NCBI GenBank assembly: GCA_002269645.1
Contig: NIVC01000135.1
Coordinates: 62,001-126,000 of the forward strand
Length of the DNA: 64,000 nt
Direction of reading: 5' to 3'
From: Macrostomum lignano
Taxonomy: Eukaryota
Shown: piece after piece, positions 2,398 through 52,661 of the stretch
Numbering within the stretch: the first letter of the stretch is position 1
Layout of the letters: every line of letters begins with the position of its first letter
Notes under the pieces: generated by a model
The model's database searches: none
What the model was told of the DNA's origin: nothing
What the model saw: the letters and a program-made list of their open reading frames with translations, nothing else
Translations under genes and position numbers: made by a program

Positions 2398-2407
2398 AAT
2401 TTTTGCA

Positions 2408-3526: not shown

Positions 3527-3534
3527 AGTCTGCG

Positions 3535-5142: not shown

Positions 5143-5209
5143 CTGCTGTTTTAACGAGATCGCTAGCCATGCTTTCTGCCCTGCTGCCTCCGTTTTTCTC
5201 ATTTTACAG

Positions 5210-12725: not shown

Positions 12726-13518
12726 AGAGATTTACATTTTTCTCGAGCTTCTCAAAGTTCTTTTTCATCGGTACAAAACTAGGTTTATCAAGTAGTATGA
12801 AGACCCGCGTCTAAAAAGAAGCCCGTTCACTGGTGGCAAGAAGACGTGTGCGTCTTCATACTACTTGTAGATTTATTTAGATAGTTTAGAACTTTATATA
12901 GATCAGAGAAGCTTGTTTGCGTCTTTGAAAATCAATATTCACTCAGCTCTCTATATTAGTGCGTGCCCACAGTGCCTTCACTGCGCTTCTCTCATCTTAG
13001 CCTAAAGCCTAATTTGCCAAATTTGGTTCAAGTTCGGCCATAGACTAGGATTTTAGCGCTTTGTATTAAGACTGAGTTAAGCAGCTTTTGCGATCTCCTC
13101 AATTTAGTCTATGGCCAGTGGCCTCTGTGCAGTACAGTTCCATTCTGAGCGCCTTCCCCCAGCTTTTGTTAAGCTAGCAGACAAGCGAGCGGCGATCGCA
13201 ACTCTGAGGCTCAGATAAGTTTTGTTCAACGAAGGACCAAGACTGGGTAAGTTTGATTTCTGACCAATTCTGCCATGCCTTATATATGGAATCTTTGTTC
13301 GCAAAGCTGTTCCATTTTTAATTTAGGGAACTATATAAGCTGTTGAAACCCGCGGCTTTTGTATGAGCCCACTAAATTACAATCCTTGGAATTATTTTTT
13401 TGTATGCATTTTTAAATCTGATGTCATATTTAAACAAAAACTTGTTAATATTTATAGGATAAAAGTTAACAATGTGAGACTATAAAGTTTTAATAGAAGA
13501 TGAATCTTTTAAAAGATA

Positions 13519-14560
13519 GATCCAGCAGGCCTGGCGCCCCCTTCCTTTCCAGCAGGCCTGGCGCTCCCCCTTTCCAGCAAGCCTGGCGCCCCCCTCCTTT
13601 CCAGCAGGCCTGGCGCCCCTTCCTTTCCAGCAGGCCTGGCGCCCCCCCTTTCCAGCAAGCCTGGCGCCCCCCTCCTTTCCAGCAGGCCTGGCGCCCCCTT
13701 CCTTTCCAGCAGGCCTGGCGCTCCCCCTTTCCAGCAAGCCTGGCGCCCCCTCCTTTCCAGCAGGTCTGGCGCCCCCTTCCTTTCCAGCAGGCCTGGCGCC
13801 CCCTCCTTTCCAGCAGGTCTGGCGCCCCCTTCCTTTCCAGCAGGCCTGGCGCTCCCCCTTTCCAGCAAGCCTGGTGCCCCTCTCCTTTCCAGCAAGCCTG
13901 GCGCCCCCCTCCTTTCCAGCAGGCCTGGCGCCCCCTTCCTTTCCAGCAGGCCTGGCGCTCCCCCTTTCCAGCAAGCCTGGCGCCCCCTCCTTTCCAGCAG
14001 GTCTGGCGCCCCCTTCCTTTCCAGCAGGCCTGGCGCTCCCCCTTTCCAGCAAGCCTGGTGCCCCCCTCCTTTCCAGCAGGCCTGGCGCCCCCCTCCTTTC
14101 CAGCAGGCCTGGTGCCCCTCTCCTTTCCAGCAAGCCTGGCGCCCCCCTCCTTTCCAGCAGGCCTGGCGCCCCCTTCCTTTCCAGCAGGCCTGGCGCTCCC
14201 CCTTTCCAGCAAGCCTGGCGCCCCCTCCTTTCCAGCAGGTCTGGCGCCCCCTTCCTTTCCAGCAGGCCTGGCGCTCCCCCTTTCCAGCAAGCCTGGTGCC
14301 CCCCTCCTTTCCAGCAGGCCTGGCGCCCCCCTCCTTTCCAGCAGGCCTGGTGCCCCTCTCCTTTCCAGCAGGCCTGGTGCCCCTCTCCTTTCCAGCAGGC
14401 CTGGCGCCCCCTTTCTCCTTTCCAGCAGGCCTGGCGCCTCTCTCCTTTCCAGCAGGCCTGGCGCCTCTTTCCTTTCCAGCAGGTCTGGCGCCCCCTCTTC
14501 TCCAGCAGGCCTGGCGCCTCCTCTTTTCCAGTAGACCTGGCGCCCCCCTCCATTCCAGCA
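13519..14560 (+). repeat. GC-rich minisatellite, unit about 25-27 bp (TCCAGCAGGCCTGGCGCCCCCTTCCTT)
   Basis: About 40 tandem copies with minor variants. This array explains all the long overlapping ORFs between 13480 and 14757. Confidence 0.95.
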
Positions 14561-14847
14561 GGCTTGGCTCCGCCAGAAATGGGGACATTAAAATGCGTGG
14601 ACATAGTTGCCACAAATGCACACTCACTCTTGTATTGAAATTGGCTTATTCGGTTTCGTATTACTACACGATATAAGCGTATTTGCGCATACGCGTACGT
14701 ATCCGTCAATAATTTAGGACACAAACAGTAACTTGTAAATACAGTCTGATTTAGCATTATGATTGCTAACGCATTTGTATTTGATTGTTATTGTTAATTA
14801 TGAGGCAAATTTCTTTCGATTGTGATCAAAATTCAATATAATATCAA

Positions 14848-18746: not shown

Positions 18747-19230
18747 ATGAACCGCAACCGTAGCCAGTCAGCCGATTCCGTCCCCACAACTGTGCCAGCA
18801 CTGTGAGGGAAACTAAAGGAGCTTGGTTTGCCAACCTCTGGCAACAAAGCAAAACTAGTCCAAAGGCTTCGCGCCCATATTCAAGACGTGGAGACCTCTG
18901 TCGAGAGTGACGAGCTGACGAACGTTCAGGCCATTCTGCGAGCTACAGGGCAGAACTCGGCGGTAGCGAGCAGCGGGGGCAGCCCCCCAAATCGGCGACA
19001 GGTCGAGAACGGTGGGTCTGGCGCGGCTGGCGGCCTGGACGAACAGCTGCTGGAGGCGGAGAAGCGAATCCGTCTGCTGAAGCTGCGCAAAGAAGAAGCG
19101 CAGCTGGAATCCGAGTTCGCGTTATTAGTGCAGCATGAAGTTGGGCAGCAGCATGAGAACATAAGAGCCTCAGGGAGAAGTACCAGTAGCGTCTACCGAA
19201 TCGTTGACTTCGTCAGCAAGCGCAAGCAGT
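18747..19230 (+). pseudogene. 5' fragment of a second Ngaro-type ORF1 (SAP + coiled coil)
   Basis: TVPAL*GKLKELGLPTSGNKAKLVQRL is a SAP motif with an internal TGA. AAGGLDEQLLEAEKRIRLLKLRKEEAQL aligns to ORF1 at 2408. Similarity ends after YRIVDFVSKRKQ. A GC-rich terminus-like block lies upstream at 18550-18720. Confidence 0.75.
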
Positions 19231-19593
19231 GTCTTCTAGGCCAGAGTAAGTCTAAAGAAGTGGCGGTCGAATATTATGATCGCACTAATAATCTATATAC
19301 ACACATGGTTCATGTACGTAATAATCTGTGACGGGAAAACAAACGCACGTACATCTAGTCATATATATATACGTGTGCGCGCATAATTTTATGTACAGTT
19401 ATACTACATATATTCATTCACATATGGTTGCGTCTACAACTGAGTGAGGCTTGATGATAAGTTTCGATTTCGTTTCACATGGTCGAAGCTTAATTTGTTT
19501 TTCTAAGAAATAATTCCTAATTACTTCTTTGTTTGTGTTGGACACAACCATTGTGATGTGGCGTAATCGGTAAAAAATAGATATTTTATTCAA

Positions 19594-22500
19594 TCAAGCA
19601 TCTGTGCGCCGAACGACACGACCTGATCGGGTGACAATACAGCTCCTGTGTTGTTGCGGTTGCTGTTGATCCGGTCGACCCCCACGCGATCCAGTCGCAG
19701 CGCAGTCAATTGCATCAACTGACTGCGATCGTCGTCGGGTGGTGTTCGAACGCATACTAGATGTTGATGGTGATCTGAGTCGCCTGCTCGATGATCGCAC
19801 ATTCGATGTCGCAGCAATCGACTGATCAACAGCCACTGAAGACGTAGCACTGTCAGTCGATGTACCAGTCAAACGAGTGCGCCGCTCCGACCGCGTCTGG
19901 ACTAATCGCCGATCGTCAGCATCATCGTTAGCAGCAGCCAATCGACTTAAATCGGCAGGTACGCTCGATCCAATGCGTGTACGTACAGAGGAGAGCAACG
20001 ACCCCGATTTAGGTACAGATCGGTTGTCACAGCGGCGGCGGTGGCTAGTCTGTACATTTGGCGTATGAGTCGCGTCATCGCTTCTTTGACAGCCAGTTGT
20101 TGCCCTGTCGTCATCGGCGTCTTCGTCAGCATCTTCATCATCGTCGGCGTCTAGATCGACGTTCGGCAAATTGATAATACCACGTCGTTTTTTTGTTGGT
20201 GGCGACTGCGGCGACTTGGATCGCGACATTCTGCTCGACGACGATGACAATGTCGACGCCAACTGGTGAGAGTTTGATTTCAGACGACTCTTACCAGCTG
20301 ACGGCGAGCGCGGCGACGGCGGTAATGAGCGAAATTTGCTGGACGATGGCGGACGCGGCGACGGCGATTTAGGGAGGCGACATTTGTCGGACGATGGCGG
20401 ACGCGGCGACGGCGATTTAGAGAGGCGACATTTGCCGGACGATGGCGGACGCGGCGACAGCGATTGAGAGCGGCGAAATTTGCCAGACGTCTTAGTCGGT
20501 GCAGTATCAACGTCGGCTTGATCGTGCTGCTCTGGCAATACGATGCTAACGCTTCGTCGTCGTCGTCTGCTTCCCGATGTCGTCGTCGTCGTCGTCGCCG
20601 ACTCACTGGTCTGCTGCTCGATTGCTGTCGCAAGCGTCGACGCATCCAAGATGGACTGTTGGACTTTTGCGCATTTCGATTTGCTCCGCTCGTCACCAGT
20701 TTGGTTGACGGCGAACTTTTCGAAACAGTCTCTCAAGTCGGTAGCAACTTCGAGTCGAGCTGCGTCAATTGCTGCGGCGGCGTAGTACCGGGTGACAACA
20801 GGCTTCGAAGTGTCGTACAAATGCGTCACCTGTTCGATCTGGTCCGGATGAAAACGCGCGTACGCAGACAGTTGATTGCGCCGTCCATCGCTGGCCCGGT
20901 ATTTGCGACCAATCACTCGAACCGAACGTCGACCACGAGCCTCGAATAGCCACCAGTGACTCGAGCCGTCCCGTTGGAAGTAGGGAAGATATAGCGCATT
21001 TCATCGGGCACTTGCACATCTAGGTCTTCGAGCGCAGGCGTGACAAACTTTTCGCACCATAGAATGAACGATTTACACAATCGTCTCGGTGACAACAGTG
21101 TTGCACCACGGCCTCGCGAACCTTGCTTGTGTGGCACCTCGCTTGGTGGTAATCGCGTTATGACGGTATCCATACTGGAGCCTTTGTTTTTTAACGCGTC
21201 TTCGAGGTGATGCCGACACAGATAGATCCACGGCAATACACGATTGCTATGGAATATTGCAGTGCCCAAGAATGCCAGCTCGCGACTGATTGGCATTATG
21301 AAATCGCGCCATCTTCCTCGCGGAGAATTCGTTTGATTGACCAGCCGCGCAATGTCGGACCAGGTACCTTCTGTTGGTAAATCTGACCAGGAATGTTTCT
21401 CGATCATATTAACCAATTCCAGTAGCCTGTTTCTTACGAGGTCATACTCTTCGACAGACAGGAACAACTCGGTGTATTTTTGTTGTCGCGCATCATCATT
21501 CAGATGGTACCGATTGTCCTGTTGTCGGCTGACTCGTCCGAGTTGCGCCTGCGTGTATTATAAGAGAAGCAAAAATTCATCTTTATGTATCATCATTATC
21601 ATCATTATCGTTCTTATCATCATCATCATCATCATCATCACCACCATCATGTGCACAATCATAGTTTATAGTTCTAATTTACACATAATATAGATTATAA
21701 TTTCAAAAATATAATCAAACAAACAAACAAACAAACAAACAAACAAACAAACAAACAGGTACTTACGTAGACAGCATCGATTCGAAGTATTAGAAACGCA
21801 GACACTGTCTTTCGATGGTATAGATTGCTGGGCAACTTCTTTACTCCGCTGGCTATTCCATGCAATAGTCTGGCCGCGGTAGTGACGTCATCTGCTGCGT
21901 CAGTGAATACGCCGTTGGGTCGTTCCGATAACCGGAGTGCCCTAATTACAGTGATGGCACCGAAATCAGACTCATTTTCCAATAGAGTCTTGACTGCGGC
22001 TAGGATGCACTGTAATTGGCATGCTTTTACTCCGGCGGTACTTGCTTGCCAGACACCGCGGGTTTTCATCTCTGTCAAATCTGTGGCAACTTGGTGCGGA
22101 GCATTTAACCAAGTCTCCAGACTGACGCCCAGCTTATGTTTTAATTTGGCAAGCGTTCCTCGAACCGCAGTGGTCAGTTGTTTCCGACGATGGACATGCG
22201 ACTTGTTTTCTTCAATCTTGTTATTAATTTTCCACCAAATATCGACAAGTCGCTTAGTCATGTCCTCGGCGATAGACTGTGCTTCACCATAGTCGATCAC
22301 GGCAAGTGGATCATCAGTCTCGCTCGCACTGCTGTCGGAACCACCCGCATTGTCATCCGCTTCGTCCTGAATGTCGGCATCGGAACCAGACGACACATCG
22401 GCGGCTTGGTCGTTGTCAGGCGGCGCTGGTACGACAATGACTCTGCCTTGCTGCTCAGAATCTGCAGTTTCATTGTCCTTGGCACACTGTTCGATCGCGT

Positions 22501-23664
22501 CCAATAAGCTGGCAACAATCTCGTCGTCTGATGTCGCGACGACGTTACCAACCGCGATCTCTTCTCCTACTTCTTGGTGCCGTTGTACCGCGCTGGCCAG
22601 TCTACCGATAGCAGGACGCTTGACCTGACTGATGCTCGTCTCGAGTGCACGGACCAGCTGTTCAGACGCCAATTCGACGTGACCATGGAGTACACGTGTC
22701 ACATCGACAATGTCTACGTCGCTAGTCTCCATGTCTGGACGAAGCTGTTCTGCAAGCCTGTCAAGTTGACTAGCTGTTTTTTGCAGATCAGTCAAATAGC
22801 CTGTTGGTTGTTTAAGCGTAAAACAATATCCATTTACTATGTAATTAGTACACGTCGATAAGTATACAATAATATTGTGCCATACTATCTACTAATATAG
22901 AAGAATTTAACGATGAATTATTATTACCTTGGAATTGGCGCGCCTTTCGTATTGTCGCATCGGCAATGCTGTTGCCGACCGAATCATTGTTAGACGATGG
23001 ATGAACACGGTTGTCGCCAGATGGTCTCTGTTCGACTGGGTTGTACAACTCGTCGACAGATTCGACGACACACGGTCTAACATGCTCAGGCGCGGCATTG
23101 GTCGGCCCGGTTGCGAACTTAGCTGCTGATTGGCGTTCGGTGTTCGATGCCGGGGTCACCGTTTGAGCGCGGCGGCGTTCACTGTTGACTGTCTTGGTCG
23201 CATTGTCTTGAAGTTTGAAAATTGGAATCACTGCTTAGTCCAACGTCTACACCGTCGAGTAAACCACTTGTAGACGGACCAGCGGATAAACTGACGACCG
23301 GCTGTTCAACAGTCTGTTGAGCAATCACATCTGTTGGGCGTGCGTTTGTTGCGTCAGGCTTTCGCTTGCATGATCGTTTTATATGTCTTTCGACACAACG
23401 AACAATCTTATGGCAGTGTGGACACATTGTCATGTTGTACACAGCACCGCCATGCTGCAACCTGGTCGCTTTCAACACAGCCAACGCCTTTGCCGTTATA
23501 GGCGCACCCGCGTTTGGACGTCGTTGTTCTTCAACACCGGTCCAGTCGAACTCGCGGATGAATGATGCGTGGCGTCTCACAAGATGTCGCACCATGCTCG
23601 TTCGACAGAGCAACTCGGCGCAGACTGGACATGCCGTATTGTCATTATTTTGATTATCGGCCAT
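19594..23664 (-). mobile_element. Intron-containing zinc-finger + tyrosine-recombinase gene (Crypton-like), about 1,200 aa, with two frame disruptions
   Basis: ATG at 23664. Zinc fingers CPVC..RHLVRRH and CPHC..RHIKRSC. Phase-matched introns 22927-22801 and 21766-21549. YR-like motifs FLGTAIFHSNR, HKQG, YIFPTSNG, SDGRR and LYDTSKPVVTRYY. Frameshifts near 23232 and 20916. S/R/P-rich tail; AATAAA after the stop. Confidence 0.65.
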
Positions 23665-24263: not shown

Positions 24264-24525
24264 GCCAAAGTCGTCAGCCAAAGTCGTCAAGCTGCCAAAG
24301 TCGTCAGCCAAAGTCGTCAAGCTGCCAAAGTCGTCAGCCAAAGTCGTCAATCAATTCTCATTGGCTTGTCTATGTGCATAGGGGAATCTAGCCATGGCTG
24401 CGTGACTATTGAACGTATATTCTATGGTCTATGGACTAGGGAAATCCATACTCGCTGCGGAAATCCAAAGGTCGACTGACGACTTAGGCTGACGACTTTG
24501 GTTATAGGTTGACGACTTTGGCGGC
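24264..24525. repeat. Inverted clusters of GCCAAAGTCGTCA repeats around a ~120-bp core
   Basis: Tandem copies at 24264-24350 and reverse-complement copies (TGACGACTTTGG) at 24470-24525. Confidence 0.7.
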
Positions 24526-24569
24526 TTTAATTTTGTGTTTTTAAGGTGTTTTGATAAAATAATTATTTT

Positions 24570-25111
24570 TCACTACTAAGATTCGAACCCAGGTCGCTAC
24601 ATTAGCAGTCCAGTCTGTTCGCATCTAGACTATCTCTTTTCGATTGGAGAACATGAATTTTGGCCCTTATAATTCAATACTTACAGCAAGTCGTTTAGTG
24701 TAAAAAGGTATGACGTAATCAATTTCTCAGTCAGCCAGTATCCGTCTCAATTGAAGTTAGCAATATGGTTACGCAATTTTAATCAAGTCTTGTGCGCATT
24801 TCTTCCACACTGTTTTCAACTTGTTGTGATGTAATATTTATCAGAATCAAAATTCAGTCAGTCAGTTTTTTCTCTAGCATTCTTATAATGCAATTCAATT
24901 CGAAAATTTGGCTTGACCTTTGCAAAAAAGCATGTTTTTCGAATATTTAATCCCTTTAACATTGAGCAGTTTCTTAGCCAAGATGCATGTACCGTCCCAG
25001 GAAAATTTCTGATCAAATGGTGCAAGTTTGAAGAAAATCGGTTGAGCCAATTTTTCTGAAATCTATCGCATACCCACATACCCACAGACAACTCATTTTT
25101 AGTATATAGGA
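24570..25111 (-). mobile_element. 5' part of a minus-strand non-autonomous Helitron-like unit
   Basis: The minus strand reads CTAG|TCCTATATACTAAAAATG...AACCGATTTTCTTCAAACTTG, the same head as the units at 25706, 30309 and 34590. It includes the tRNA-like cassette at 24575-24635. Confidence 0.7.
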
Positions 25112-26242
25112 CTAGCCAATTCCAACCCCCGTTGGGGCTTTCCGTCCAAACTCCAACCACAGTTTTCCCCATCCACAAAATCCCCGATGCAAAGAATCTC
25201 ACATGCAAAGAATCCCCCATCCAAAGAACCCCCATCGATAGAATTATTGATCCGAAGAATTCCCCATTCAAGAAATCCTCCCATGTGAAGAATTCCCCAT
25301 CCAATGAATCCCTTACTCAAGAAATCCCCTGTCTACAGAAGCCCCTTATCCTAAGAATCCCCATCCAAAGAATCCTCCATCCATCCCTATCCAAAGAATC
25401 CCCCCATCCATCCCTATCAAAAAAATTTCCCCATCCATTCCTATCTAAAGAATCCCCCATCCATCCATATCCAATGAATCCCCCACCAAAGAATCCCCAT
25501 CCAAATAATTCACATTATAATCCACATCCACAGAATCCCATCCAAATAATCCATAGATCTCCCATCTAAATAATCCCCCATCAAAAAAAATTGGCCAAAT
25601 AATTCCCTCGTCAACAGAACCCCGTCTAAATAATCCCCATCCAAAGAATCGAAAGAATCTCCCATCCAAATAATCCCCCTATCAATAGAATTCATGGCCA
25701 AAGAATCTAATATACTAAAAATGAAATGCTTGGTTGCTTGCTTGTAATTGATTTTCTCCCGAACGGCTCAACCGATTTTCTTCAAACTTGCACCATTCGA
25801 TCAGAAATTTTCCCGGGACGGTACATGCATATTGGCTAAGAAATTGCTCAATGTTAAAGGGATTAAATATTCGAAAAACATGATTTTTTGCAAAGGTCAA
25901 GCAGCTCTTTCGACCTGAAATGCATTGTAAGAATGCTAGAGAAAAATCTGACTGGTTGAATTCTGATTCTGAAATAGATTGCATCACAATACACTTTATT
26001 TATCGTCTGTGTACTGGCTGAATTTGACACTCAATTGAATTGCGTCACAGCTTTGAGGGTGAAAGTATAGTGCAGTACTGAATTTATATTACGTAACCAT
26101 ATTGTTAACTTTCATAGACACTGGTACTGACTTGCCTAAGAAATTGATTATGTCATAACTGCTTCGCGTGACTTTTTACTCTACCTGACTTGGTGTGAGT
26201 GTTGAATTATATAAGTGGTACAAATTCACTGATAACTTCGAT

Positions 26243-26305
26243 GAGAGCTAGCCTAGAGCTGAGCAGACCAGACTGCTAATGCAGCGACCTGGGTTCGAAT
26301 CTAAG
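26243..26305 (+). other. tRNA-derived (Ser-GCT-like) degenerate cassette; copies at 24575(-), 27740, 30845, 32190 and 35105
   Basis: Contains GACTGCTAAT and the B-box GGTTCGAATC. The stems do not close, so this is not a functional tRNA. Confidence 0.5.
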
Positions 26306-26374
26306 TAGTTTAAAAGTAGTAGTGTAAAATTTTTTATTAAAAGCTTTTATTAAAGGACTAAATAAAAACACTTA

Positions 26375-27455
26375 GATTACTGCACTCGATAAGCTAAGGA
26401 TTATTGCTCTTGGCAAACCAAGGAATACTGCACTCGATAAGCCAAGGATTATTGCTCTTGGCAAACCAAGGATTACTGCACTCGATAAGCCATGGATTAT
26501 TGCTATTAATAAACCAAGGATTACTGCACTCGATAAGCCAAGGATTATTGCTATTAATAAACCATGAATTACTGCACTCGATAAGCCAAGGATTATTGCT
26601 ATTAATAAACCAAGGATTACTGCACTCATAAGCCATGGATTATTGCTATTAATAAACCAAGGATTACTGCACTCGATAAGCCAAGGATTATTGCTATTAA
26701 TAAACCAAGGATTACTGCACTCGATAAGCCAAGGACTATTGCTATTAATAAACCAAGGATTACTGCACTCAATAAACCAAGGACTATTGCTCTTGGCAAA
26801 CCAAGGATTACTGCACTCGATAAGCCAAGGACTATTGCTCTTGGCAAACCAAGGATTACTGCACTCGATAAGCCATGGATTATTGCTATTAATAAACCAA
26901 GGATTACTGCACTCGATAAGCCAAGGATTATTGCTATTAATAAACTAAGGATTACTGCACTCGATAAACCAAGGATTATTGCTATTAATAAACCAAGGAT
27001 TATGCACTTGGCAAACCAAGGATTACTGCAATCGATAAGCCAAGGATTATTGCTATTAATAAACCAAGCATTACTGCACTCAATAAATTACTGCACTCAA
27101 TAAACCAAGGACTATTGCTATTAATAAACCAAGGATTACTGCACTCAAAAAACCAAGGACTATTGCTCTTGGCAAACCAAGGATTACTGCACTCGATAAG
27201 CCAAGGATTATTGCTATTAATAAACCAAGGATTACTGCACTCGATAAGCCAAGGATTATTGCTATTAATAAACCAAGGATTAATGCACTCGATAAACCAA
27301 GGATTATTGCTATTAATAAACCAAGGATTACTGCACTCGATAAGCCAAGGATTATTGCTATTAATAAACCAAGGATTACTGCACTCAATAAACCAAGGAC
27401 TATTGCTCTTGGCAAACCAAGGATTACTGCACTCGATAAGCCAAGGATTACTGCG
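26375..27455 (+). repeat. Satellite A: 48-bp dimer of 24-bp monomers
   Basis: Unit ATAAACCAAGGATTACTGCACTCG + ATAAGCCAAGGATTATTGCTATTA. Confidence 0.95.
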
Positions 27456-27864
27456 CTTGATAAGCTTGGCTACATGTATAGGATTATTTCTATCCAGGGA
27501 TGCTTGCTATTTAGGGATTCTTGCTATGTGCAGGATGCTTGCTATCTGGAAGGATGCTTCTACATTATTTGGGGTATGCTTGCTATCTGCAAGATGCTTG
27601 CTATCTGCAAGATGCTTGCTATCTGCAGATGCTTGCTATCTGGGTGGATGCTTGCTAGGAGTATTAGGGGATGCTTGCTACTGGGGGATGCTTGCTGTCT
27701 TGGGAATATTTTCTATTTAGGGGTAATGACTAAAATTCATGAGAGCTAGCCTAGAGGTAAACAGACTAAACTGCTAAATGCAGGGACGATGGTTCGAATT
27801 TTTAGAGAGTAGAGTTTTTTTAATTAAAGCCTTTTAACGCCAAGACAAAAAAAATTATGGAAGC

Positions 27865-28745
27865 GTCATGTAAACAATCATACAAGCGTCATGTAAACAA
27901 TCATAGAAGCGTCATGTAAAAATCATAGAAGCGTCATGTAAAAATCATAGAAGCGTCATGTAAAAATCATAGAAGCGTAATGTAAACAATCATAGAAGCG
28001 TCATGTTAAAATCATAAAAGCGTCATGTAAACAATCATACAAGCGTCATGTAAACAATCATAGAAGCGTCATGTAAAAAAATCATAGAAGCGTCATGTTA
28101 AAATCATAAAAGCGTCATAAAAAATCATAGAAGCGTCATGCAAGCAATCATAGAAGCGTAATGTAAACAATCATAGAAGCGTCATGTTAAAATCATACAA
28201 GCGTCATGTAAACAATCATACAAGCGTCATGTAAACAATCATAGAAGCGTCATGTAAAAAAATCATAGAAGCGTCATGTTAAAATCATAGAAGCGTCATG
28301 TAAACAATCATAGAAGCGTCATGTAAAAATCATAGAAGCGTCATGTAAAAATCATAGAAGCGTCATGTAAACAATCATAAAAGCGTCATGTAAACAATCA
28401 TAGAAGCGTCATGTATACAATCATAGAAGCGTCATGTAAACAATCATAGAAGCGTCATGTATACAATCATAGAAGCGTCATGTAAACAATCATAGAAGCG
28501 TCATGTAAAAATCATAGAAGCGTCATGTAAAAATCATAGAAGCGTCATGTAAAAATCATAGAAGCGTCATGTAAAAAATCATAGAAGCGTCATGTAAAAA
28601 TCATAAAAGCGTCATGTAAAAAATCATAGAAGCGTCATGTAAACAATCATACAAGCGTCATGTAAACAATCATAGAAGCGTCATGTAAAAATCATACAAG
28701 CGTCATGTAAACAAGCATAGAAGCGTCATGAAAAAATTATAGAAG
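27865..28745 (+). repeat. Satellite B: 22-23-bp unit ATCATAGAAGCGTCATGTAAA(C)A
   Basis: About 38 tandem copies. Confidence 0.95.
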
Positions 28746-29695
28746 CCTCATATAAAAACTAATGAAAGTGTGTCATTTAAAAAATTAAGAAGCATCATGG
28801 AAGAATAAAAGAAGCGTAACGTAAAAATCAAAAGAAGCGTCATGTCAGACATGAAAGAAATGTCATATAAAAATTAAATGAAGCTATAGTACAGTGCTGT
28901 GCTGGGGAGAATTACTGAGACGTCAAGGCTCACAGAGAATAACTGAGATTACAGGGGGTTTCTGAGATGTTAAAGCAAAAGTCAGAAGCTACTTCAAAGT
29001 ACATGTACTTTACTTAAGTTTTTTATTGCATTCTTTGTTGGCTTGCCACGGTGGGGGGGGCGCTGATAGAAGAAGAGTCATGTAAAAATAAAAGGAGCAC
29101 TATGTATACATAAAATAAAAGTCATGTCAAAGTTAAAAGATTCATTTGGGAATTGCTACGATGTCAAAGCTTGGAGGGAATCGTTATAGTGCTGTGATTC
29201 TTAAAGAAGGAATCACTTAAATGCCAAGGCTTAGGGAAGAAGAATTGCTGTGATTTCAAGGCTTTAGGTTGGGTGAAAGTTAGGTTTACGTCAGGTTTGG
29301 GTTGAGGGTTAGATTTTAGCGCGTTTCAAGGTTAACAGGGGATTTTTTAGATTTCAAGGTTTATGGGGGCATCGCTGACATGTCAAGGCTTACGAGGGGA
29401 ATCTATCTATCTATCTATAGCTGAGATGTCAAGGCTCACGGGGGAATAAATGAGATGTCAAGGCTAATGTCAGAAGCTACATGTAGTTTATTGGAAAAAA
29501 GTTATTACATTATTTGTTGGCTCCTCACGGGAGGGATCGCTGATAGAAAAAGCGTAATGTAAAAAAAAAGAAGCTTCATGTCAAAGTTAAGAGATTCATT
29601 TGGGAATCCCTACGATGTCGAGGCTTGCAGGGAATCGCTATAATGCTGTAGTAGTGCTATAGACTCTTAGAGAGAATTACTGAAATTTCAATGCT

Positions 29696-29729
29696 TTAGG
29701 GTTAGGGTTAGGGTTAGGGTTAGGGTTAG
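29696..29729 (+). repeat. Interstitial telomeric repeat (TTAGGG)5
   Basis: Five perfect units plus TTAG. Confidence 0.95.
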
Positions 29730-30976
29730 AAAATAGACAGATTTTTTAAGATTTCAAGGCTTGTGGGAGCATTGCTCAGATGTCAAGGGGGGAGTTGATA
29801 TGTTAAGGCTTGTGGGGGGGATTGCTGACATGTCAAGGCTTACAAGGGTACTGGTAGCGTACTGAAGCATACTGGTATAAGTAGCTCTGAAAGAAGGCAA
29901 GTATGGTTGAATTTCAATGTCTGTTATAAAATTCTGCACAAACATGTTTTATTGGTACATAAGCCTGGAATTAAAATGAGAATTCGATTCCTAGCCCCCT
30001 CCCTAAGAATTTTTTTCATTTAAAAGGATTCGTCCTTGCTTATTGGCCACCCCGAAGGCCATTTTTTATCAAAAATGATAAAAATAATTTTTATCAAACA
30101 CGTTGACATATACAGGGCTCTAAACTAAAAACTGTAAAAAGTTGATAGTTTTGTTTTACCTAAAATGCGTTATTAACGATCTCCAAAAATTCCTATTTTA
30201 AGCTTAAGCTTAAGAAAAACACTTAAAGTACTCCTGCTAAAAGGTATATTATATTAGACGAATATTAATTATTTCTGCTCCCCGAAGGGGGGCAAAACTT
30301 TAGCTAGTTCCATATACTAAAAATGGTCTGTCGGTATATGTGTGTGTGATCGATTTTAGCAAAAATGGCTCAACCGATTTTGTTCAAACTTGCACCATTC
30401 GATCAGAAATTTTTCCGTGACGGTACATGCATATTGGCTAAGAAATTGCTCGATGCTAAAGGGATTAAATATTCGAAAAACATGCTTTTTTGCAAAGGTC
30501 AAGCAGCTATTTCGACTTGAAACGCACTGTAAAAATGCTAGAGAAAAAACTGACTGGTTGAATTCTGATTCTGAAATAGATTGCATCACAATACACTTTA
30601 TTTATCGTCTGTGTACTGGCTGAATTTGACACTCAATTGAATTGCGTCACAGCTTTGAGTGTGAAAATATAGTGCAGTACTGAATTTATATTACGTAACC
30701 ATATTGTTAGCTTTCATAGACACTGGTACTGACTTGCCTAAGAAATTGATTATGTCATAACTGCTTCGCGTGACTTTTTACTCTACCTGACTTGGTGTGA
30801 GTGTTGAATTATATAAGTGGTACAAATTCACTGATAACTTCGATGAGAGCTAGCCTAGAGCTGAGCAGACCAGACTGCTAATGCAGCGACCTGGGTTCGA
30901 ATCTAAGTAGTTTAAAAGTAGTAGTGTAAAATTTTTTATTAAAAGCTTTTATTAAAGGACTAAATAAAAACACTTA

Positions 30977-31880
30977 GATTACTGCACTCGATAAGCTAAG
31001 GATTATTGCTCTTGGCAAACCAAGGAATACTGCACTCGATAAGCCAAGGATTATTGCTCTTGGCAAACCAAGGATTACTGCACTCGATAAGCCATGGATT
31101 ATTGCTATTAATAAACCAAGGATTACTGCACTCGATAAGCCAAGGATTATTGCTATTAATAAACCAAGGATTACTGCACTCAATAAACCAAGGACTATTG
31201 CTATTAATAAACCAAGGATTACTGCACTCAATAAACCAAGGACTATTGCTCTTGGCAAACCAAGGATTACTGCACTCGATAAGCCAAGGACTATTGCTCT
31301 TGGCAAACCAAGGAATACTGCACTCGATAAGCCAAGGATTATTGCTATTAATAAACCAAGGATTACTGCACTCAATAAACCAAGGACTATTGCTATTAAT
31401 AAACCAAGGATTACTGCACTCAATAAACCAAGGACTATTGCTCTTGGCAAACCAAGGATTACTGCACTCGATAAGCCAAGGACTATTGCTCTTGGCAAAC
31501 CAAGGATTACTGCACTCGATAAGCCATGGATTATTGCTATTAATAAACCAAGGATTACTGCACTCGATAAGCCATGGATTATTGCTATTAATAAACCAAG
31601 GATTACTGCACTCAATAAACCAAGGATTATTGCTATTAATAAACCAAGGATTATGCACTTGGCAAACCAAGGATTACTGCACTCGATAAGCCAAGGATTA
31701 TTGCTATTAATAAACCAAGGATTACTGCACTCAATAAACCAAGGACTATTGCTCTTGGCAAACCAAGGATTACTGCACTCGATAAGCCATGGATTATTGC
31801 TATTAATAAACCAAGGATTACTTACTGCACTTGGCAAACCAAGAATTACTGCACTCGATAAGCCATGGATTATTGCGCTT
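30977..31880 (+). repeat. Satellite A array in unit 2
   Basis: Same 24/48-bp unit. Confidence 0.95.
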
Positions 31881-32314
31881 GATAAGCTTGGCTACATGTA
31901 TAGGATTATTTCTATCCAGGGATGCTTGCTATTTAGGGATTCTTGCTATGTGCAGGATGCTTGCTATCTGGAAGGATGCTTCTACATTATTTGGGGTATG
32001 CTTGCTATCTGCAAGATGCTTGCTATCTGCAAGATGCTTGCTATCTGCAGATGCTTGCTATCTGCAGATGCTTGCTATCTGCAGATGCTTGCTATCTGGG
32101 TGGATGCTTGGTAGGAGTATTAGGGGATGCTTGCTACTGGGGGGATGCTTGCTGTCTTGGGAATATTTTCTATTTAGGGGTAATGACTAAAATTCATGAG
32201 AGCTAGCCTAGAGGTAAACAGACTAAACTGCTAAATGCAGGGACGATGGTTCGAATTTTTAGAGAGTAGAGTTTTTTTAATTAAAGCTTTTTAACGCCAA
32301 GACAAAAAAAAATT

Positions 32315-33222
32315 ATGGAAGCGTCATGTAAACAATCATAGAAGCGTCATGTAAAAATCATAGAAGCGTCATGTAAAAATCATAGAAGCGTCATGTAAAA
32401 ATCATAGAAGTGTCATGTAAAAATCATAGAAGCGTCATGTAAACAATCATAGAAGCGTCATGTTAAAATCATAAAAGCGTCATGTAAACAATCATACAAG
32501 CGTCATGTAAACAATAATAGAAGCGTCATGTAAAAAAATCATAGAAGCGTCATGTTAAAATCATAAAAGCGTCATAAAAAAATCATAGAAGCGTCATGCA
32601 AACAATCATAGAAGCGTCATGTTAAAATCATACAAGCGTCATGTAAACAATCATACAAGCGTCATGTAAACAATCATAGAAGCGTCATGTAAAAAATCAT
32701 AGAATCGTCATGTTAAAATCATAAAAGCGTCATAAAAAATCATAGAAGCGTCATGTAAACAATCATACAAGCGTCATGTAAACAATCATAGAAGCGTCAT
32801 GTAAAAATCATAGAAGCGTCATGTAAAAATCATAGAAGCGTCATGTAAAAATCATAGAAGCGTCATGTAAACAATCATAGAAGCGTCATGTAAACAATCA
32901 TAGAAGCGTCATGTAAACAATCATAGAAGCGTCATGTAAAAATCATAGAAGCGTCATGTAAAAATCATAGAAGCGTCATGTAAAAATCATAGAAGCGTCA
33001 TGAAAAAATCATAGAAGCGTCATGTAAAAATCATAGAAGCGTCATGTAAAAATCATAGAAGCGTCATGTAAAAAATCATAGAAGCGTCATGTAAACAATC
33101 ATACAAGCGTCATGTAAACAATCATAGAAGCGTCATGTAAACAATCATACAAGCGTCATGTAAACAAGCATAGAAGCGTCATGTTAACATAGAAGCGTCA
33201 TGAAAAAATCATAGAAGCCTCA
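32315..33222 (+). repeat. Satellite B array in unit 2
   Basis: Same 22-23-bp unit. Confidence 0.95.
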
Positions 33223-34164
33223 TATAAAAACTAATGAAAGTGTGTCATTTAAAAAATTAAGAAGCATCATGGAAGAATTAAAGAAGCGTAACGTAAAAAT
33301 CAAAAGAAGCGTCATGTCAGACATGAAACAAGTGTCATAAAAATTAAATGAAGCTATAGTGCTGTGCTGGGGAGAATCACTGAGACGTCAAGGCTCACAG
33401 AGAATAACTGAGATTACAGGGGGGTTTCTGAGATGTTAAAGCAAAAGTCAGAAGCTACTTCAAAGTACATGTACTTTACTTAAGTTTTTTTATTGCATTC
33501 TTTGTTGGCTTGCCACGGTGGGGGGGGCGCTGATAGAAGAAGAGTCATGTAAAAATAAAAGGAGCACTATGTATACATAAAATAAAAGTCATGTCAAAGT
33601 TAAAAGATTCATTTGGGAATTGCTACGATGTCAAAGCTTGGAGGGAATCGTTATAGTGCTGTGATTCTTAAAGAAGGAATCACTTAAACGCCAAGGCTTA
33701 GGGAAGAAGAATTGCTGTGATTTCAAGGCTTTAGGTTGGGTGAAAGTTAGGTTTACGTCAGGTTTGGGTTGAGGGTTAGATTTTAGCGCGTTTCAAGGTT
33801 AACAGGGGATTTTTTAGATTTCAAGGTTTATGGGGGCATCGCTGACATGTCAAGGCTTACGAGGGGAATCTATCTATCTATCTATCTATAGCTGAGATGT
33901 CAAGGCTCACGGGGAATAAATGAGATGTCAAGGCTAATGTCAGAAGCTACATGTAGTTTATTGGAAAAAAGTTATTACATTATTTGTTGGCTCCTCACGG
34001 GAGGGATCGCTGATAGAAAAAGCGTAATGTAAAAAAAAGAAGCTTCATGTCGAAGTTAAGAGATTCATTTGGGAATCCCTACGATGTCGAGGCTTGCAGG
34101 GAATCGCTATAATGCTGTAGTAGTGCTATAGACTCTTAGAGAGAATTACTGAAATTTCAATGCT

Positions 34165-34204
34165 TTAGGGTTAGGGTTAGGGTTAGGGTTAGGGTTAGGG
34201 TTAG
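34165..34204 (+). repeat. Interstitial telomeric repeat (TTAGGG)6
   Basis: Six perfect units plus TTAG, at the position homologous to 29696. Confidence 0.95.
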
Positions 34205-34554
34205 AAAGTAGACAGATTTTTTAAGATTTCAAGGCTTATGGGAGCATCGCTGAGATGTCAAGGGGGGAGTTGATATGTTAAGGCTTGTGGGGGGGATTGC
34301 TGACATGTCAAGGCTTACAAGGGTACTGGTAGCGTACTGAAGCATACTGGTAGAAGTAGCTCTGAAAGAAGGCAAGTATGGTTGAATTTCAATGTCTGTT
34401 ATAAAATTCTGCACAAACATGTTTTATTGGTACATAAGCCTGGAATTAAAATGAGAATTCGATTCCTAGCCCCCCTCCCTAAGAATTTTTTTTCATTTTA
34501 AAGGATTCGTCCCTTGCTTATTGGCCACCCCGAAGGGGGGCGCTAGATTGCTAG

Positions 34555-37500
34555 CTAAATATACTAAATCTCTAAGGTTTGTATGCTTGTCTAATATACT
34601 AAAAATGGTCTGTTTGTGTGTGTGTGATCGATTTTAGCAAAAATGGCTCAACCGATTTTGTTCGAACTTGCACTGTTCAATCAGAAATTTTTCCGTGACG
34701 GTACATGCATCTTGGCTAAGAAATTGCTCAATATTAAAGGGATTAAATATTCGAAAAACATGCTTTTTTGCAAAGGTCAAGCAGCTCTTTCGACTTGAAA
34801 TGCATTGTAAGAATGCTAGCAGAAAAACTGACTGGTTGAATTCTGATTCTGAAATAGATTGCATCACAATACACTTTATTTATCGTCTGTGTACTGGCTG
34901 AATTTGACACTCAATTGAATTGCGTCACAGCTTTGAGTGTGAAAGCATAGCGCAGTACTGAATTTATATTACGTAACCATATTGTTAACTTTCATAGACA
35001 CTGGTACTGACTTGCCTAAGAAATTGATTATGTCATAACTGCTTCGTGTGACTTTTTACTCTACCTGACTTGGTGTGAGTGTTGAATCACTGATAACTTC
35101 GATGAGAGCTAGCCTAGAGCTGAACAGACCAGACTGCTAATGCAGCGAACTGGGTTCGAATCTAAGTAGCTTAAAAGTAGTAGTGTAAAATTTTTTATTA
35201 AAAGCTTTTATTAAAGAACTAAATAAAAACACTTAGATTACTGCACTCGATAAACCAAGGACTATTGCTCTTGGCAAACCAAGGATTACTGCACTCAATA
35301 AACCAAGGTCTATTGCTCTTGGCAAACCAAGGATTACTGCACTTGATTAACCAAGGATTATTGCTATTAATAAACCAAGGATTACTGCACTCGATAAGCC
35401 AAGGATTATTGCTATTAATAAACCAATGATTACTGCACTCGATAAGCCAAGGATTATTGCTATTAATAAACCAAGGATTACTGCACTCGATAAGCCAAGG
35501 ACTATTGCTATTAATAAACCAAGGATTACTGCACTTGGCAAACCAAGGATTACTGCACTCGATAAGCCAAGGATTATTGCTATTAATAAAACAAGGGTTA
35601 TTGCACTTGATTAATCAAGGATTATTGCTATTAATAAACCAAGGATTACTGCACTCGATAAGCCATGGATAATTGCTATTAATAAACCAAGGATTACTGC
35701 ACTCGATAAGCCAAGGATTATTGCTATTAATAAACCAAGAATTACTGCACTCAATAAACCAAGGACTATTGCTCTTGGCAAACCAAGGATTACTGCACTT
35801 GATTAATCAAGGATTATTGCTATTAATAAACCAATGATTACTGCACTCGATAAGCCATGGATTATTGCTATTAATAAACCAAGGATTACTGCACTTGATA
35901 AGCCATGGATTATTGCTATTAATAAACCAAGGATTACTGCACTCGATAAGCCAAGGATTATTGCTATTAATAAACCAAGGATTACTGCACTTGGCAAACC
36001 AAGGATTACTGCACTCGATAAGCCAAGGATTATTGCTATTAATAAACCAAGGATTACTGCACTCAATAAACCAAGGACTATTGCTCTTGGCAAACCAAGG
36101 ATTACTGCACTCAATAAACCAAGGACTATTGCTCTTGGCAAACCAAGGATTACTGCACTTGATTAATCAAGGATTATTGCTATTAATAAACCAAGGATTA
36201 CTGCACTCGATAAGCCAAGGATTATTGCTATTAATAAACCAATGATTACTGCACTCGATAAGCCAAGGATTATTGCTATTAATAAACCAAGGACTACTGC
36301 ACTCGATAAGCCAAGGATTATTGCTATTAATAAACCAAGGATTACTGCACTTGGCAAACCAAGGATTACTGCACTCGATAAGCCAAGGATTATTGCTATT
36401 AATAAACCAAGGATTAATGCACTTGATTAATCAAGGATTATTACTATTAATAAACCAAGGATTACTGCACTCGATAAGCCATGGATAATTGCTATTAATA
36501 AACCAAGGATTACTGCACTCGATAAGCCAAGGATTATTGCTATTAATAAACCAAGGATTAATGCACTTGATTAATCAAGGATTATTGCTATTAATAAACC
36601 AAGGATTACTGCACTTGGAAAACCAAGGATTACTGCACTCGATAAGCCATGGATTATTGCTATTAATAAACCAAGGATTACTGCACTCGATAAGCCAAGG
36701 ATTATTGCTATTAATAAACCAAGGATTACTGCACTCAATAAACCAAGGACTATTGCTCTTGGCAAACCAAGGATTACTGCAATCAATAAACCAAGGACTA
36801 TTGCTCTTGGCAAACCAAGGATTACTGCACTTGATTAATCAAGGATTATTGCTATTAATAAACCAAGGATTACTGCACTCAATAAAGCAAGGACTATTGC
36901 TCTTGGCAAACCAAGGATTACTGCACTCAATAAACCAAGGACTATTGCTCTTGGCAAACCATGGATTACTGCACTTGATTAATCAATGATTATTGCTATT
37001 AATAAACCAAGGATTACTGCACTCGATAAGCCATGGATTATTGCTATTAATAAACCAAGGATTACTGCACTTGGCAAACCAAGGATTACTGCACTCGATA
37101 AGCAAAGGATTATTGCTTTTAATAAACCAAGGATTAATGCACTTGATTAATCAAGGATTATTGCTATTAATAAACCAAGGATTACTGCACTCGATGAGCC
37201 ATGGATTATTGCCATTAATAAACCAAGGATTACTGCACTCGATAAGCCAAGGATTATTGCTATTAATAAACCAAGGATTACTGCACTTGGCAAACCAAGG
37301 ATTACTGCACTCGATAAGCCAAGGATTATTGCTATTAATAAACCAAGGATTACTGCACTCGATAGCCAAGGATTACTGCTATTAATAAACCAAGGATTAC
37401 TGCACTCGATAGCCAAGGATTACTGCTCTTGATAAGCTTGGCTACATGTATAGGATTATTTCTATCCAGGGATGCTTGCTATTTAGGGATTCTTGCTATG

Positions 37501-47160: not shown

Positions 47161-47221
47161 TAGAACTTAATTAAGTCTGAAAGAACTACCTAAGCAGTTT
47201 TCAGTTTGTCCCTTTGCAGTC

Positions 47222-52647: not shown

Positions 52648-52661
52648 TCTAGAATAATTTG

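What the first reader, a model, noticed from the sequence alone, without database searches (positions are those of the whole stretch)
19594..23664. Spliced zinc-finger + tyrosine-recombinase gene with a long Ser/Arg/Pro tail (Crypton-like, divergent catalytic set)
Seen in sequence: four apparently unrelated minus-strand ORFs join into one ~1,200-aa product through two phase-matched GT-AG introns (22927-22801, 21766-21549) and two 1-nt frame disruptions (~23232, ~20916). The order is two Cys/His fingers, an acidic linker, a helical region, and then YR-like motifs HSNR / HKQG / YIFPTSNG / SDGRR / LYDTSKPVVTRYY. A 400-aa basic tail with repeated KxRLxKSPSPRPPSS units follows. Established knowledge: YRs use an R-K-H-R-H/W-Y catalytic set, and Cryptons are intron-containing YR DNA transposons, some of them domesticated. 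Inference: R, K, R and Y appear retained at canonical spacing, but both His positions look replaced, so this is either a divergent active recombinase lineage or a domesticated DNA-binding derivative. No RT is attached, and it begins just downstream of where the Ngaro ORF1 fragment breaks off (~19230).
Basis: partly seen in the sequence, partly recalled or inferred. Interest (0 to 1): 0.8.

Follow-up and report, generated by a model that had tools for sequence, protein, structure and literature searches.

The report
Divergent recombinase-like zinc-finger gene, broken copy
This is a frame-broken copy of a multi-copy flatworm (Macrostomum lignano) gene whose protein joins two zinc fingers to a domain that carries the essential active-site residues of tyrosine recombinases in the right order, but is too divergent for any standard database to recognise it.

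Summary
The gene structure is real. Four minus-strand ORFs join through two phase-matched GT-AG introns. An intact 1084-aa M. lignano paralogue (P0006, 93-97% identical) reads through both frame breaks. The breaks are a 10-nt insertion (23211-23202) and a missing G (20927), so the window copy is defective unless the assembly is wrong.

The recombinase (YR) reading is plausible but unproven. Pfam, PHROGs, NCBIfam, PDB sequence and profile searches and hhalign scores give no significant YR match. Two AlphaFold runs failed (pLDDT 40 and 49).

Three distant relatives (23-35% identity) conserve one invariant Lys, one invariant Tyr and Arg residues. An unsupervised alignment to a Cre/Ngaro profile puts these opposite Cre R173, K201, R292 and Y324. 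None of 890 shuffled decoys did that.

It is not a demonstrable Crypton: no Crypton-type YR match, no defined ends, and copy number is confounded by host polyploidy. Best reading: a new, very divergent, RT-less YR-like lineage, probably selfish or recently so. The neighbouring Ngaro fragment is unrelated.

The parts
22928..23664 (-). Exon 1. Start ATG at 23664. Two zinc fingers (C2H2-like 23631-23569, C2HC-like 23424-23368), then a linker.
   Evidence: tblastn of P0006 gives 73% identity over the finger part and 93% after it. The first ~75 aa are only ~55% identical to P0006, yet all metal ligands are kept.
23202..23211 (-). Frame disruption 1: 10 extra nt (TCAAGACAAT) relative to the intact paralogue. 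Shifts the frame by +1 and creates the stop at 23179-23181.
   Evidence: P0006 reads ...SDSNFQT|ATKTANSERRRAQ straight through.
22750..22927 (-). Intron 1. GT donor at 22927. Both are in phase.
21767..22800 (-). Exon 2. Acidic linker (22417-22310) and helical region. Includes a stretch (22099-21968) whose best, non-significant local alignment is to the first core-binding-domain helices of Cre (residues 20-60).
   Evidence: (E=0.09). P0006 is 95.8% identical.
21519..21766 (-). Intron 2. GTAAGT donor at 21766. Acceptors at 21549 (P0001) or 21519 (P0006, P0003, P0007, P0002). Contains (TTTG)n and (GAT)n microsatellites.
20737..21476 (-). Putative YR-like catalytic domain (FLTxxE start to end of last helix). 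Candidate active-site codons: Arg-I 21242-21240; Pro (Glu176 position) 21233-21231; Lys 21128-21126; Ser (His-II position) 20892-20890; Arg-II 20883-20881 (second Arg 20880-20878); Thr (His/Trp-III position) 20811-20809; Tyr 20784-20782 (preceding Tyr 20787-20785).
   Evidence: Family conservation. In-register hhalign alignment to the Cre/Ngaro profile with decoy control. Predicted secondary structure around the motifs. Coordinates.
20927..20927 (-). Frame disruption 2: a single G where the intact paralogue implies GG (1-nt deletion). It cuts off the part of the domain carrying Arg-II and Tyr, giving VVDVRFE* at 20913-20915.
   Evidence: This could be a homopolymer assembly error; raw reads are needed.
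19594..20736 (-). C-terminal low-complexity Ser/Arg/Pro/Asp tail ending at stop 19596-19594. Includes a 16-aa (48-nt) unit KxRLxKSPSPRPPSS x 3.4 at 20329-20489.
   Evidence: P0006 is 96.7% identical as far as it extends.
19584..19589 (-). AATAAA polyadenylation-type signal 5 nt after the stop codon.
   Evidence: Read directly from the sequence.

Best explanation
The locus is one genomic copy of a lineage-restricted, multi-copy Macrostomum lignano gene family.

Shown:
- The gene has three exons.
- The encoded protein has two N-terminal Cys/His zinc fingers, an acidic linker, a helical region, a ~250-aa conserved domain and a long Ser/Arg/Pro tail.
- This copy carries two frame-breaking indels relative to an intact paralogue.

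Inferred:
- The conserved domain is a highly divergent tyrosine-recombinase/type-IB-topoisomerase-type catalytic domain.
- It keeps exactly the four residues that are most sensitive in Cre: Arg-I, the beta-hairpin Lys, Arg-II and the Tyr nucleophile.
- It has replaced the three tolerant positions: Glu176 to Pro, His289 to Ser/Tyr/Met/Thr, Trp/His315 to Thr.
- An intact copy would bind DNA through the fingers and a core-binding-like helical region, and would cut and rejoin DNA through a 3'-phosphotyrosyl intermediate.
- With no RT, sparse and patchy relatives that are themselves broken, and a setting among transposons and satellites, the family is most likely an RT-less (Crypton-style) YR element or a very recent derivative.
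- The window copy is a decayed, non-autonomous member.
For: Gene structure and intact paralogue.

Host identity: 94-98% identity to M. lignano proteins for two independent genes.

Family conservation at 23-35% identity:
- The only invariant Lys and the only invariant Tyr of the domain, plus invariant R(L/V)xPW and RR.
- Their spacing fits YRs. Family values are R-I to K 38, K to R-II 82, R-II to Y 32-33. Cre values are 28, 91 and 32.
- Permutation gives p = 0.001-0.03 depending on how generous the spacing windows are.

Unsupervised hhalign against Cre + 6 Cre-like + 3 Ngaro YRs:
- It aligns 201 co-linear columns (family 13-244 to Cre 104-336).
- R/K/R/Y fall opposite R173/K201/R292/Y324, and YIFP opposite YLFC.
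- 0 of 490 column-shuffled and 0 of 400 block-shuffled decoys reach 4/4; the maximum was 3, once.
- An identical LAFLG-x7-R string is shared with Cre.
- The RR doublet also occurs in the window's own Ngaro YR, HGLRRGGA.

Predicted secondary structure: Arg-I lies at a helix N-terminus after a turn, Lys between two beta-strands, RR at a helix start, and Tyr in the last helix.

Sub-threshold Foldseek lists are headed by or contain integrases and type IB topoisomerases in two libraries.

Cre mutagenesis (PMC2943603): only Tyr and Lys are strictly needed. His289 tolerates all substitutions except D/E/K/R/W.

Element-like behaviour:
- At least 7 M. lignano models show different truncations or deletions.
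- The relatives carry a frameshift (L003) or an in-frame stop (L002), and two divergent paralogues occur in one metagenome.
- Only 3 distant relatives exist among 1.84 billion representative proteins.
Against: - No significant match to any YR model or structure: Pfam including PF00589, DUF3504 and DUF3435, PHROGs, NCBIfam, PDB sequences and profiles (9, 27, 89, 90), tblastn against phages.
- hhalign scores lie within the decoy range. The real score is 16.7; the decoy 95th percentile is 17.8-19.4.
- Both AF2 models are of low confidence (pLDDT 40.5 and 48.9), and all fold matches have E > 0.28.
- The register test uses only four sequences. It tests order and spacing of conserved residues, not homology as such.
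- Mobility is not shown. No termini, no target-site duplication and no second copy in the window.
- M. lignano is polyploid by general knowledge, so several near-identical models need not mean transposition.
- Most models, like the window copy, lack an intact Arg-II/Tyr part.
Confidence: 0.5

Rival explanations
1. This is a non-mobile, lineage-specific host gene family. A YR-derived domain has been co-opted as a DNA-binding or chromatin module (domestication). The copies arose by whole-genome or segmental duplication, and the window copy is an ordinary pseudogene.
For: - Introns, a polyadenylation signal and gene models are consistent with ordinary expression.
- Zinc fingers plus an SR/SP-rich tail look like a nuclear regulator.
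- No termini or target-site duplications were found.
- M. lignano polyploidy could explain 5-7 near-identical models (general knowledge).
- Both His positions are lost.
Against: - Known domesticated Crypton YRs have lost the Tyr and the second Arg (PMC3212892). Here both are invariant.
- Distribution is extremely sparse, and the relatives are themselves frameshifted or stop-containing.
- P0006 has an unrelated 5' region and a mosaic first exon, ~55% then ~95% identity. That is not expected for alleles or homeologs.
- The locus lies among transposons and satellites.
Confidence: 0.2
2. This is not a recombinase at all. The conserved ~250-aa region is a novel alpha/beta domain of unknown fold, and its R...K...RR...Y pattern mimics the YR signature by chance.
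For: - Every formal similarity test is non-significant.
- AF2 gives no confident fold.
- Three of the seven Cre active-site positions are not conserved.
- The family alignment has only four members.
Against: - All four catalytic positions are in register in an unsupervised alignment, and 0 of 890 decoys match this.
- The spacing permutation gives p = 0.001-0.03.
- The secondary-structure context fits.
- Integrases and TopIB recur among the top sub-threshold fold hits.
- hhalign with thin profiles also misses true YR pairs (Cre vs lambda Int, Ngaro vs lambda Int), so negatives are weak evidence.
Confidence: 0.27
3. The region is a Ras guanine-nucleotide exchange factor (CDC25-homology) domain, as the UniProt names of six paralogues suggest.
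For: UniRef names P0001-P0005 and P0007 'Ras-GEF domain-containing protein'.
Against: - Pfam RasGEF is not hit even at E<=10.
- No RasGEF chain appears among the PDB sequence or profile hits.
- Predicted beta-hairpins do not fit the all-helical CDC25 domain.
- The full-length paralogue is named only for its C2H2 finger.
Confidence: 0.02

Closest known systems
Crypton DNA transposons (CryptonA/I/S/F; Kojima & Jurka 2011, PMC3212892; Glomhopper, PMC13465315)
   Same: Eukaryotic and RT-less. The coding capacity centres on a YR-type domain, the gene is interrupted by introns, there are no obvious terminal inverted repeats, copies are often truncated, and the locus sits in repeat-rich DNA.
   Different: Crypton YRs are recognisable as PF00589 or DUF3504 and keep the R-H-R-Y tetrad. 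This family hits neither model and lacks the His. It adds N-terminal C2H2/C2HC fingers and a ~400-aa Ser/Arg/Pro tail. Termini, target sites and mobility are unknown.
Cre and Cre-like recombinases; DIRS/Ngaro YRs (e.g. the window's own Ngaro YR at 5368-6210, P0012)
   Same: The best co-linear alignment puts Arg-I, Lys, Arg-II and Tyr in register. Shared local strings are (D/E/N)(I/L)AF...R before Arg-I, an RR doublet at Arg-II (Ngaro HGLRRGGA), and V-x-R-Y at the nucleophile. A helical region precedes the domain, as the core-binding domain does.
   Different: Identity is about 17% and the score is non-significant. Glu/Asp-I is Pro, His-II is Ser/Tyr/Met/Thr, and Trp/His-III is Thr. The Arg-I to Lys spacing is longer (38 against 23-32). 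There is no RT, unlike DIRS/Ngaro.
Type IB topoisomerases (poxvirus/eukaryotic)
   Same: They share the minimal R-K-R-...-Y chemistry and have no equivalent of His-II (PMC2943603). Variola TopIB and an Ostreococcus-virus topo I appear among sub-threshold fold hits.
   Different: TopIB keeps a His at position III. No sequence similarity was detected, and the domain architecture differs.
Domesticated Crypton genes with DUF3504 (ZMYM2-4, QRICH1, KCTD1, KIAA1958, WOC)
   Same: A YR-derived domain is embedded in a much longer zinc-finger-containing nuclear protein, and the canonical His is lost.
   Different: Those genes have lost the Tyr and the second Arg. They are conserved, single-locus orthologues across wide taxa (PMC3212892). 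Here Tyr and Arg are invariant, distribution is sparse and copies decay.

Membership tests
Tyrosine recombinase superfamily | Significant sequence or profile match to a YR model (Pfam PF00589, DUF3504, DUF3435; NCBIfam or PHROGs integrases; PDB YR chains) | tested here: not met
   No hit even at E<=10 for any family member. hhalign gives E = 0.16-0.72. Control: hhalign also misses Cre vs lambda Int.
Tyrosine recombinase superfamily | Conserved Arg-I, Lys, Arg-II and Tyr nucleophile in canonical order and spacing | tested here: met
   The residues are invariant in 3-4 of 4 family members. They align to Cre R173/K201/R292/Y324, and 0 of 890 decoys do the same. Spacing permutation gives p = 0.001-0.03.
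Tyrosine recombinase superfamily | His-II (HxxR) and His/Trp-III, plus Glu/Asp-I | tested here: not met
   The positions hold Ser/Tyr/Met/Thr, Thr and Pro respectively. These three positions tolerate substitution in Cre (PMC2943603).
Tyrosine recombinase superfamily | YR/TopIB catalytic fold | tested here: inconclusive
   AF2 pLDDT is 40.5 and 48.9. Foldseek best E is 0.28 (a phage integrase); TopIB ranks 2 in PDB at E = 4.6. The order of secondary-structure elements is compatible.
Tyrosine recombinase superfamily | N-terminal core-binding domain preceding the catalytic domain | tested here: inconclusive
   The best local hhalign hit of the full-length family aligns 22099-21968 with Cre 20-60 at E = 0.09. 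No Pfam Phage_int_SAM hit.
Tyrosine recombinase superfamily | Covalent 3'-phosphotyrosyl DNA intermediate; recombination activity | not testable with these tools
   Needs biochemistry on an intact copy (P0006 type).
Crypton DNA transposons | Encodes a YR but no reverse transcriptase | tested here: met
   No RT domain in any exon. The nearest RT ORFs belong to separate elements at 3535-5142 and 50093-51334. This holds only if the domain is a YR.
Crypton DNA transposons | YR groups with Crypton YRs (recognisable as PF00589 or DUF3504) | tested here: not met
   No hit. No Crypton sequences were available for a phylogeny.
Crypton DNA transposons | Multiple dispersed copies with shared termini, with or without target-site duplication | tested here: inconclusive
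   At least 7 M. lignano gene models exist. P0006 has an unrelated 5' region. There is no second copy and no flanking repeat in the window.
DIRS/Ngaro retrotransposons | RT/RNase H and YR in one element | tested here: not met
   No RT in or next to the gene. The adjacent ORF1-like fragment (18828-19331, + strand) is convergent, only 60% identical over 35 aa to the intact Ngaro ORF1, and has no continuation.
Domesticated Crypton (DUF3504) genes | Loss of catalytic Tyr and Arg-II; conserved orthologues across broad taxa | tested here: not met
   Tyr and Arg-II are invariant. Only 3 distant, fragmentary relatives exist among 1.84 billion representatives.
RasGEF (CDC25-homology) domain | Match to Pfam RasGEF or RasGEF structures | tested here: not met
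   No hit at E<=10.

The most novel reading that the evidence does not exclude
Intact members (P0006 type) are active recombinases of a previously undescribed, superfamily-level lineage of eukaryotic RT-less YR elements. These would work with a stripped-down R-K-R-Y active site (no Glu-I, no His-II, Thr at position III), close to a TopIB-like minimal set. They would be targeted by rapidly diverging N-terminal zinc fingers, and are invisible to all current YR models.
Probability: 0.25. Interest if true: 0.7.

Novelty: new variant of a known kind. Interest (0 to 1): 0.5.

Why it matters
If the domain is a working recombinase, three things follow.
- Natural YRs could dispense with all three 'tolerant' active-site residues at once, something so far explored only by Cre mutagenesis.
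- Eukaryotic YR elements would be more diverse than the PF00589, DUF3504 and DUF3435 models capture, so Crypton-like elements are under-counted in flatworm and other invertebrate genomes.
- It would offer a zinc-finger-guided recombinase scaffold.

If it is a co-opted DNA-binding derivative, it would be an unusual domestication that kept the nucleophile. For genome annotation, the 'Ras-GEF domain' names on six UniProt entries are probably wrong.

Tried and rejected
- **Family libraries.** Pfam, PHROGs and NCBIfam scans of window ORFs, the joined peptide and all family members gave only noise.
- **PDB sequence searches.** phmmer and hmmsearch with three different queries gave noise.
- **Homologue searches.** The word-indexed search found only M. 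lignano paralogues, and the profile iteration added nothing. The full HMMER scan found three true distant relatives plus one coiled-coil false positive, P0010.
- **AF2.** Two runs were both of low confidence.
- **Foldseek.** Three searches gave nothing significant.
- **hhalign with thin profiles.** Comparison with the window's Ngaro YR, Cre and lambda Int singly was non-significant. Controls showed the method misses true YR pairs.
- **Insertion into a Ngaro copy.** I looked for the Ngaro sequence resuming beyond the gene and found no continuation.
- **Other genomic copies.** Exact-protein look-ups found no record. Two metagenome scans and one viral-contig scan found nothing.
- **tblastn against phages.** Noise.
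- **RasGEF reading.** Rejected.
- **L002 insertion as an intron.** The ~80-aa insertion with an in-frame stop could not be modelled as a phase-consistent GT-AG intron, so I left it as an insertion in a decayed copy.
Full report
**Observation.** Reading the minus strand in three frames and joining the pieces confirms two introns: GTAATA...AACAG (22927-22801) and GTAAGT...CGCAG (21766-21549). Both are phase-compatible and full of stops, and the second contains (TTTG)n and (GAT)n microsatellites. The tail holds a 48-nt unit repeated 3.4 times (20329-20489, 91% matches). An AATAAA follows the stop by 5 nt (sequence).

**Host and paralogues.** The joined peptide matches UniRef proteins of Macrostomum lignano at 94-98% identity. 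The window's separate Ngaro recombinase is 98% identical to an NCBI M. lignano protein. The window is therefore M. lignano DNA or something very close to it.

One paralogue, P0006 (1084 aa), reads straight through both frame breaks and uses the same two introns, so the spliced gene is real. Comparison with it corrects three details.
- The upstream break is a 10-nt insertion (TCAAGACAAT, 23211-23202). The downstream break is a single G at 20927 where GG is implied.
- P0006 uses an intron-1 acceptor 51 nt further on (22750).

The window copy is thus defective unless the assembly is wrong. The 1-nt case could be a homopolymer error. By tblastn the copy is 93-97% identical to P0006, except for the first ~75 residues (~55%), where all zinc ligands are nevertheless kept.

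**Standard recognition of the conserved domain.** Nothing standard recognises it.
- Pfam (which includes PF00589, DUF3504, DUF3435 and RasGEF), PHROGs and NCBIfam give only noise for every family member, even at E<=10.
- PDB sequence and profile searches also give noise, as does tblastn against phages.
- A full HMMER scan of 1.84 billion representative proteins found only three real distant relatives, at 26-35% identity by that search. All sit on short eukaryote-like contigs: one Logan run and two contigs from one JGI metagenome.
- Reading those contigs extends the homology upstream. It also shows that L003 is frameshifted and L002 carries an in-frame stop within an insertion.
- AlphaFold2 with these shallow alignments failed twice (pLDDT 40.5 and 48.9). 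Foldseek then gave no hit better than E = 0.28.

**Evidence that does bear on the recombinase idea.**
- In the four-member alignment the domain has 28 invariant columns. They include exactly one Lys, one Tyr and four Arg.
- These lie as R(L/V)xPW, then (E/D)VxxK 38 residues later, then RR 82 residues after that, then TS-x7-Y with Tyr 32-33 residues after the first Arg. Cre has 28, 91 and 32. Randomly placing the same residues satisfies YR-type spacing windows in 0.1-3% of trials, depending on how generous the windows are.
- I built a template profile from Cre, six Cre-like plasmid recombinases and three Ngaro YRs. hhalign produced an alignment of 201 co-linear columns (family 13-244 to Cre 104-336).
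- That alignment puts the family's Arg, Lys, first Arg of RR and Tyr opposite Cre R173, K201, R292 and Y324. YIFP falls opposite YLFC, Ser opposite His289, Thr opposite Trp315 and Pro opposite Glu176.
- The score itself is ordinary: E = 0.2, score 16.7, against a decoy 95th percentile of 17.8-19.4.
- The register is not ordinary. None of 490 column-shuffled and none of 400 block-shuffled decoys aligned all four catalytic positions to invariant identical residues. One reached three, and the reversed alignment reached one.
- Controls show that thin-profile hhalign detects Ngaro vs Cre (95.5%) but misses Cre vs lambda Int and Ngaro vs lambda Int. Non-significant scores are therefore weak evidence against.

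Smaller points agree with this picture.
- An identical LAFLG-x7-R string is shared with Cre.
- The RR doublet also occurs in the window's own Ngaro YR, HGLRRGGA.
- The family has a conserved FLTxxE motif at the start of the region. From my own knowledge it resembles the start of many YR catalytic domains; no tool tested this.
- Predicted secondary structure puts Arg-I at a helix start after a turn, Lys between two strands, RR at a helix start and Tyr in the last helix.
- The best local hit of the full-length family is to the first core-binding helices of Cre (E = 0.09).
- Phage integrases rank 1, 6, 13 and 20, and a eukaryotic-type topoisomerase I ranks 11, in the BFVD list. Variola TopIB ranks 2 in PDB. 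All are sub-threshold.

**Could such a site work?** Gibb et al. 2010 (PMC2943603) found that only Tyr324 and Lys201 are strictly required in Cre. The two Arg tolerate one substitution each. Glu176, His289 and Trp315 tolerate several. His289 is inactive only as Asp, Glu, Lys, Arg or Trp.

The register therefore matters. With the first Arg as Arg-II, the His-II residue is Ser in M. lignano and Tyr, Met or Thr in the relatives, all tolerated in Cre. The family keeps exactly the residues shared with type IB topoisomerases and has lost the three YR-specific ones. Activity of an intact copy is therefore conceivable, but this is inference.

**Element or host gene?**

For a selfish element:
- There is no RT.
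- At least seven M. lignano models show different truncations or internal deletions.
- P0006 has an unrelated 5' region and a mosaic first exon.
- Relatives are extremely sparse, themselves broken, and two divergent ones occur in one sample.
- Intron positions are not shared with the relatives.
- The locus lies between a truncated Ngaro-like ORF1 fragment and satellite arrays.

Against:
- No termini, no target-site duplication and no second copy in the window.
- The host genome could not be searched.
- M. lignano's polyploidy (general knowledge) can inflate copy number.

The neighbouring ORF1-like fragment (18828-19331) is convergent with the gene. It matches the intact Ngaro ORF1 at 60% identity over only 35 aa and does not resume anywhere nearby. 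It says nothing about insertion.

**Comparison with known kinds.** By architecture the closest kind is Crypton: RT-less, YR-centred and intron-containing. Membership fails the one sequence test available (no PF00589 or DUF3504 match), and termini are unknown. The family differs from domesticated DUF3504 genes, which have lost Tyr and Arg-II and are conserved orthologues (PMC3212892). It is not DIRS/Ngaro because it has no RT. The UniProt 'Ras-GEF domain' names are unsupported.

**Verdict.** The most likely reading (about 0.5) is a defective copy of a new, very divergent YR-like, RT-less family. The probability that the domain is YR-derived at all is about 0.7. The main rivals are a co-opted host gene family (0.2) and a non-YR domain with a chance signature (about 0.27). 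Novelty: a new variant of a known kind. Interest is moderate (0.5), limited by the lack of a confident fold and of any evidence of mobility.

Noticed in passing
window 2384-6210 (+): An apparently intact Ngaro/DIRS-type element. It has a SAP-domain ORF1 (380 aa), an RT ORF (535 aa, RVT_1 E=4e-17) and a YR ORF (280 aa, Phage_integrase). The YR is 98% identical to M. lignano BOX15_Mlig028869g1 and has canonical R, K, HxxR and W...Y.
   Followed up: partly
window 44297-53601: 562-nt inverted repeats, 98% complementary (44504-45065 and 52891-53452). They enclose Gypsy-type gag/RT/RNase H/integrase ORFs on the minus strand (48821-52647) and, on the plus strand at 44878-45730, a region 29-31% identical to the Ngaro ORF1. 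Inverted rather than direct terminal repeats around an rve-integrase element are odd. This may be a nested or DIRS-like structure.
   Followed up: no
window 24555-37000: Large 24-bp-period satellite arrays in low-GC DNA (36-40%). They are interspersed with ~170-270-nt units that recur in inverted orientation (24824-25089 against 25765-25989, 30326-30591 and 34612-34869), which suggests a higher-order repeat of about 4.3-5 kb.
   Followed up: no
window 53894-56320: A 9-bp-period tandem array (~54130-55800) at 72% GC lies inside an 808-aa minus-strand ORF, with long ORFs open on both strands. No Pfam hit.
   Followed up: no
window 24264-24525: Just upstream of the gene there is a perfect 30-nt tandem repeat x 2.9 (GCCAAAGTCGTCAGCCAAAGTCGTCAAGCT). 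Inverted copies of the same motif lie ~130 nt away, giving a small hairpin-like, MITE-like structure.
   Followed up: no
window 13480-14757: Five overlapping ORFs of 254-425 aa are open on both strands over the same ~1.3 kb. The 425-aa one has no Pfam hit. The cause may be unusual composition or a repeat.
   Followed up: no
window 23664-23440 (first ~75 codons): The first zinc finger and its surroundings are only ~55% identical to paralogue P0006, while the rest of the protein is 93-97% identical and all Cys/His ligands are kept. This points to recombination between subfamilies or fast evolution of a DNA-recognition finger.
   Followed up: partly
UniRef entries P0001-P0005, P0007 (M. lignano): Six paralogue fragments are named 'Ras-GEF domain-containing protein', although no RasGEF similarity is detectable. 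Five of them start at the same internal residue (CILAAVKTL). Several end at NGTARVT, just before the position of the window's 1-nt deletion, so that defect may be shared by several copies.
   Followed up: partly
L002 (Logan SRR31628394) 1194-1415; L003 (JGI 3300040801) ~1190-1215: The distant relatives are themselves damaged. L002 has an ~80-aa acidic insertion with an in-frame stop between the Arg-I and Lys segments. L003 has a frameshift after HSWMRMPESG. Neither has an intron at the M. lignano intron-2 position.
   Followed up: partly
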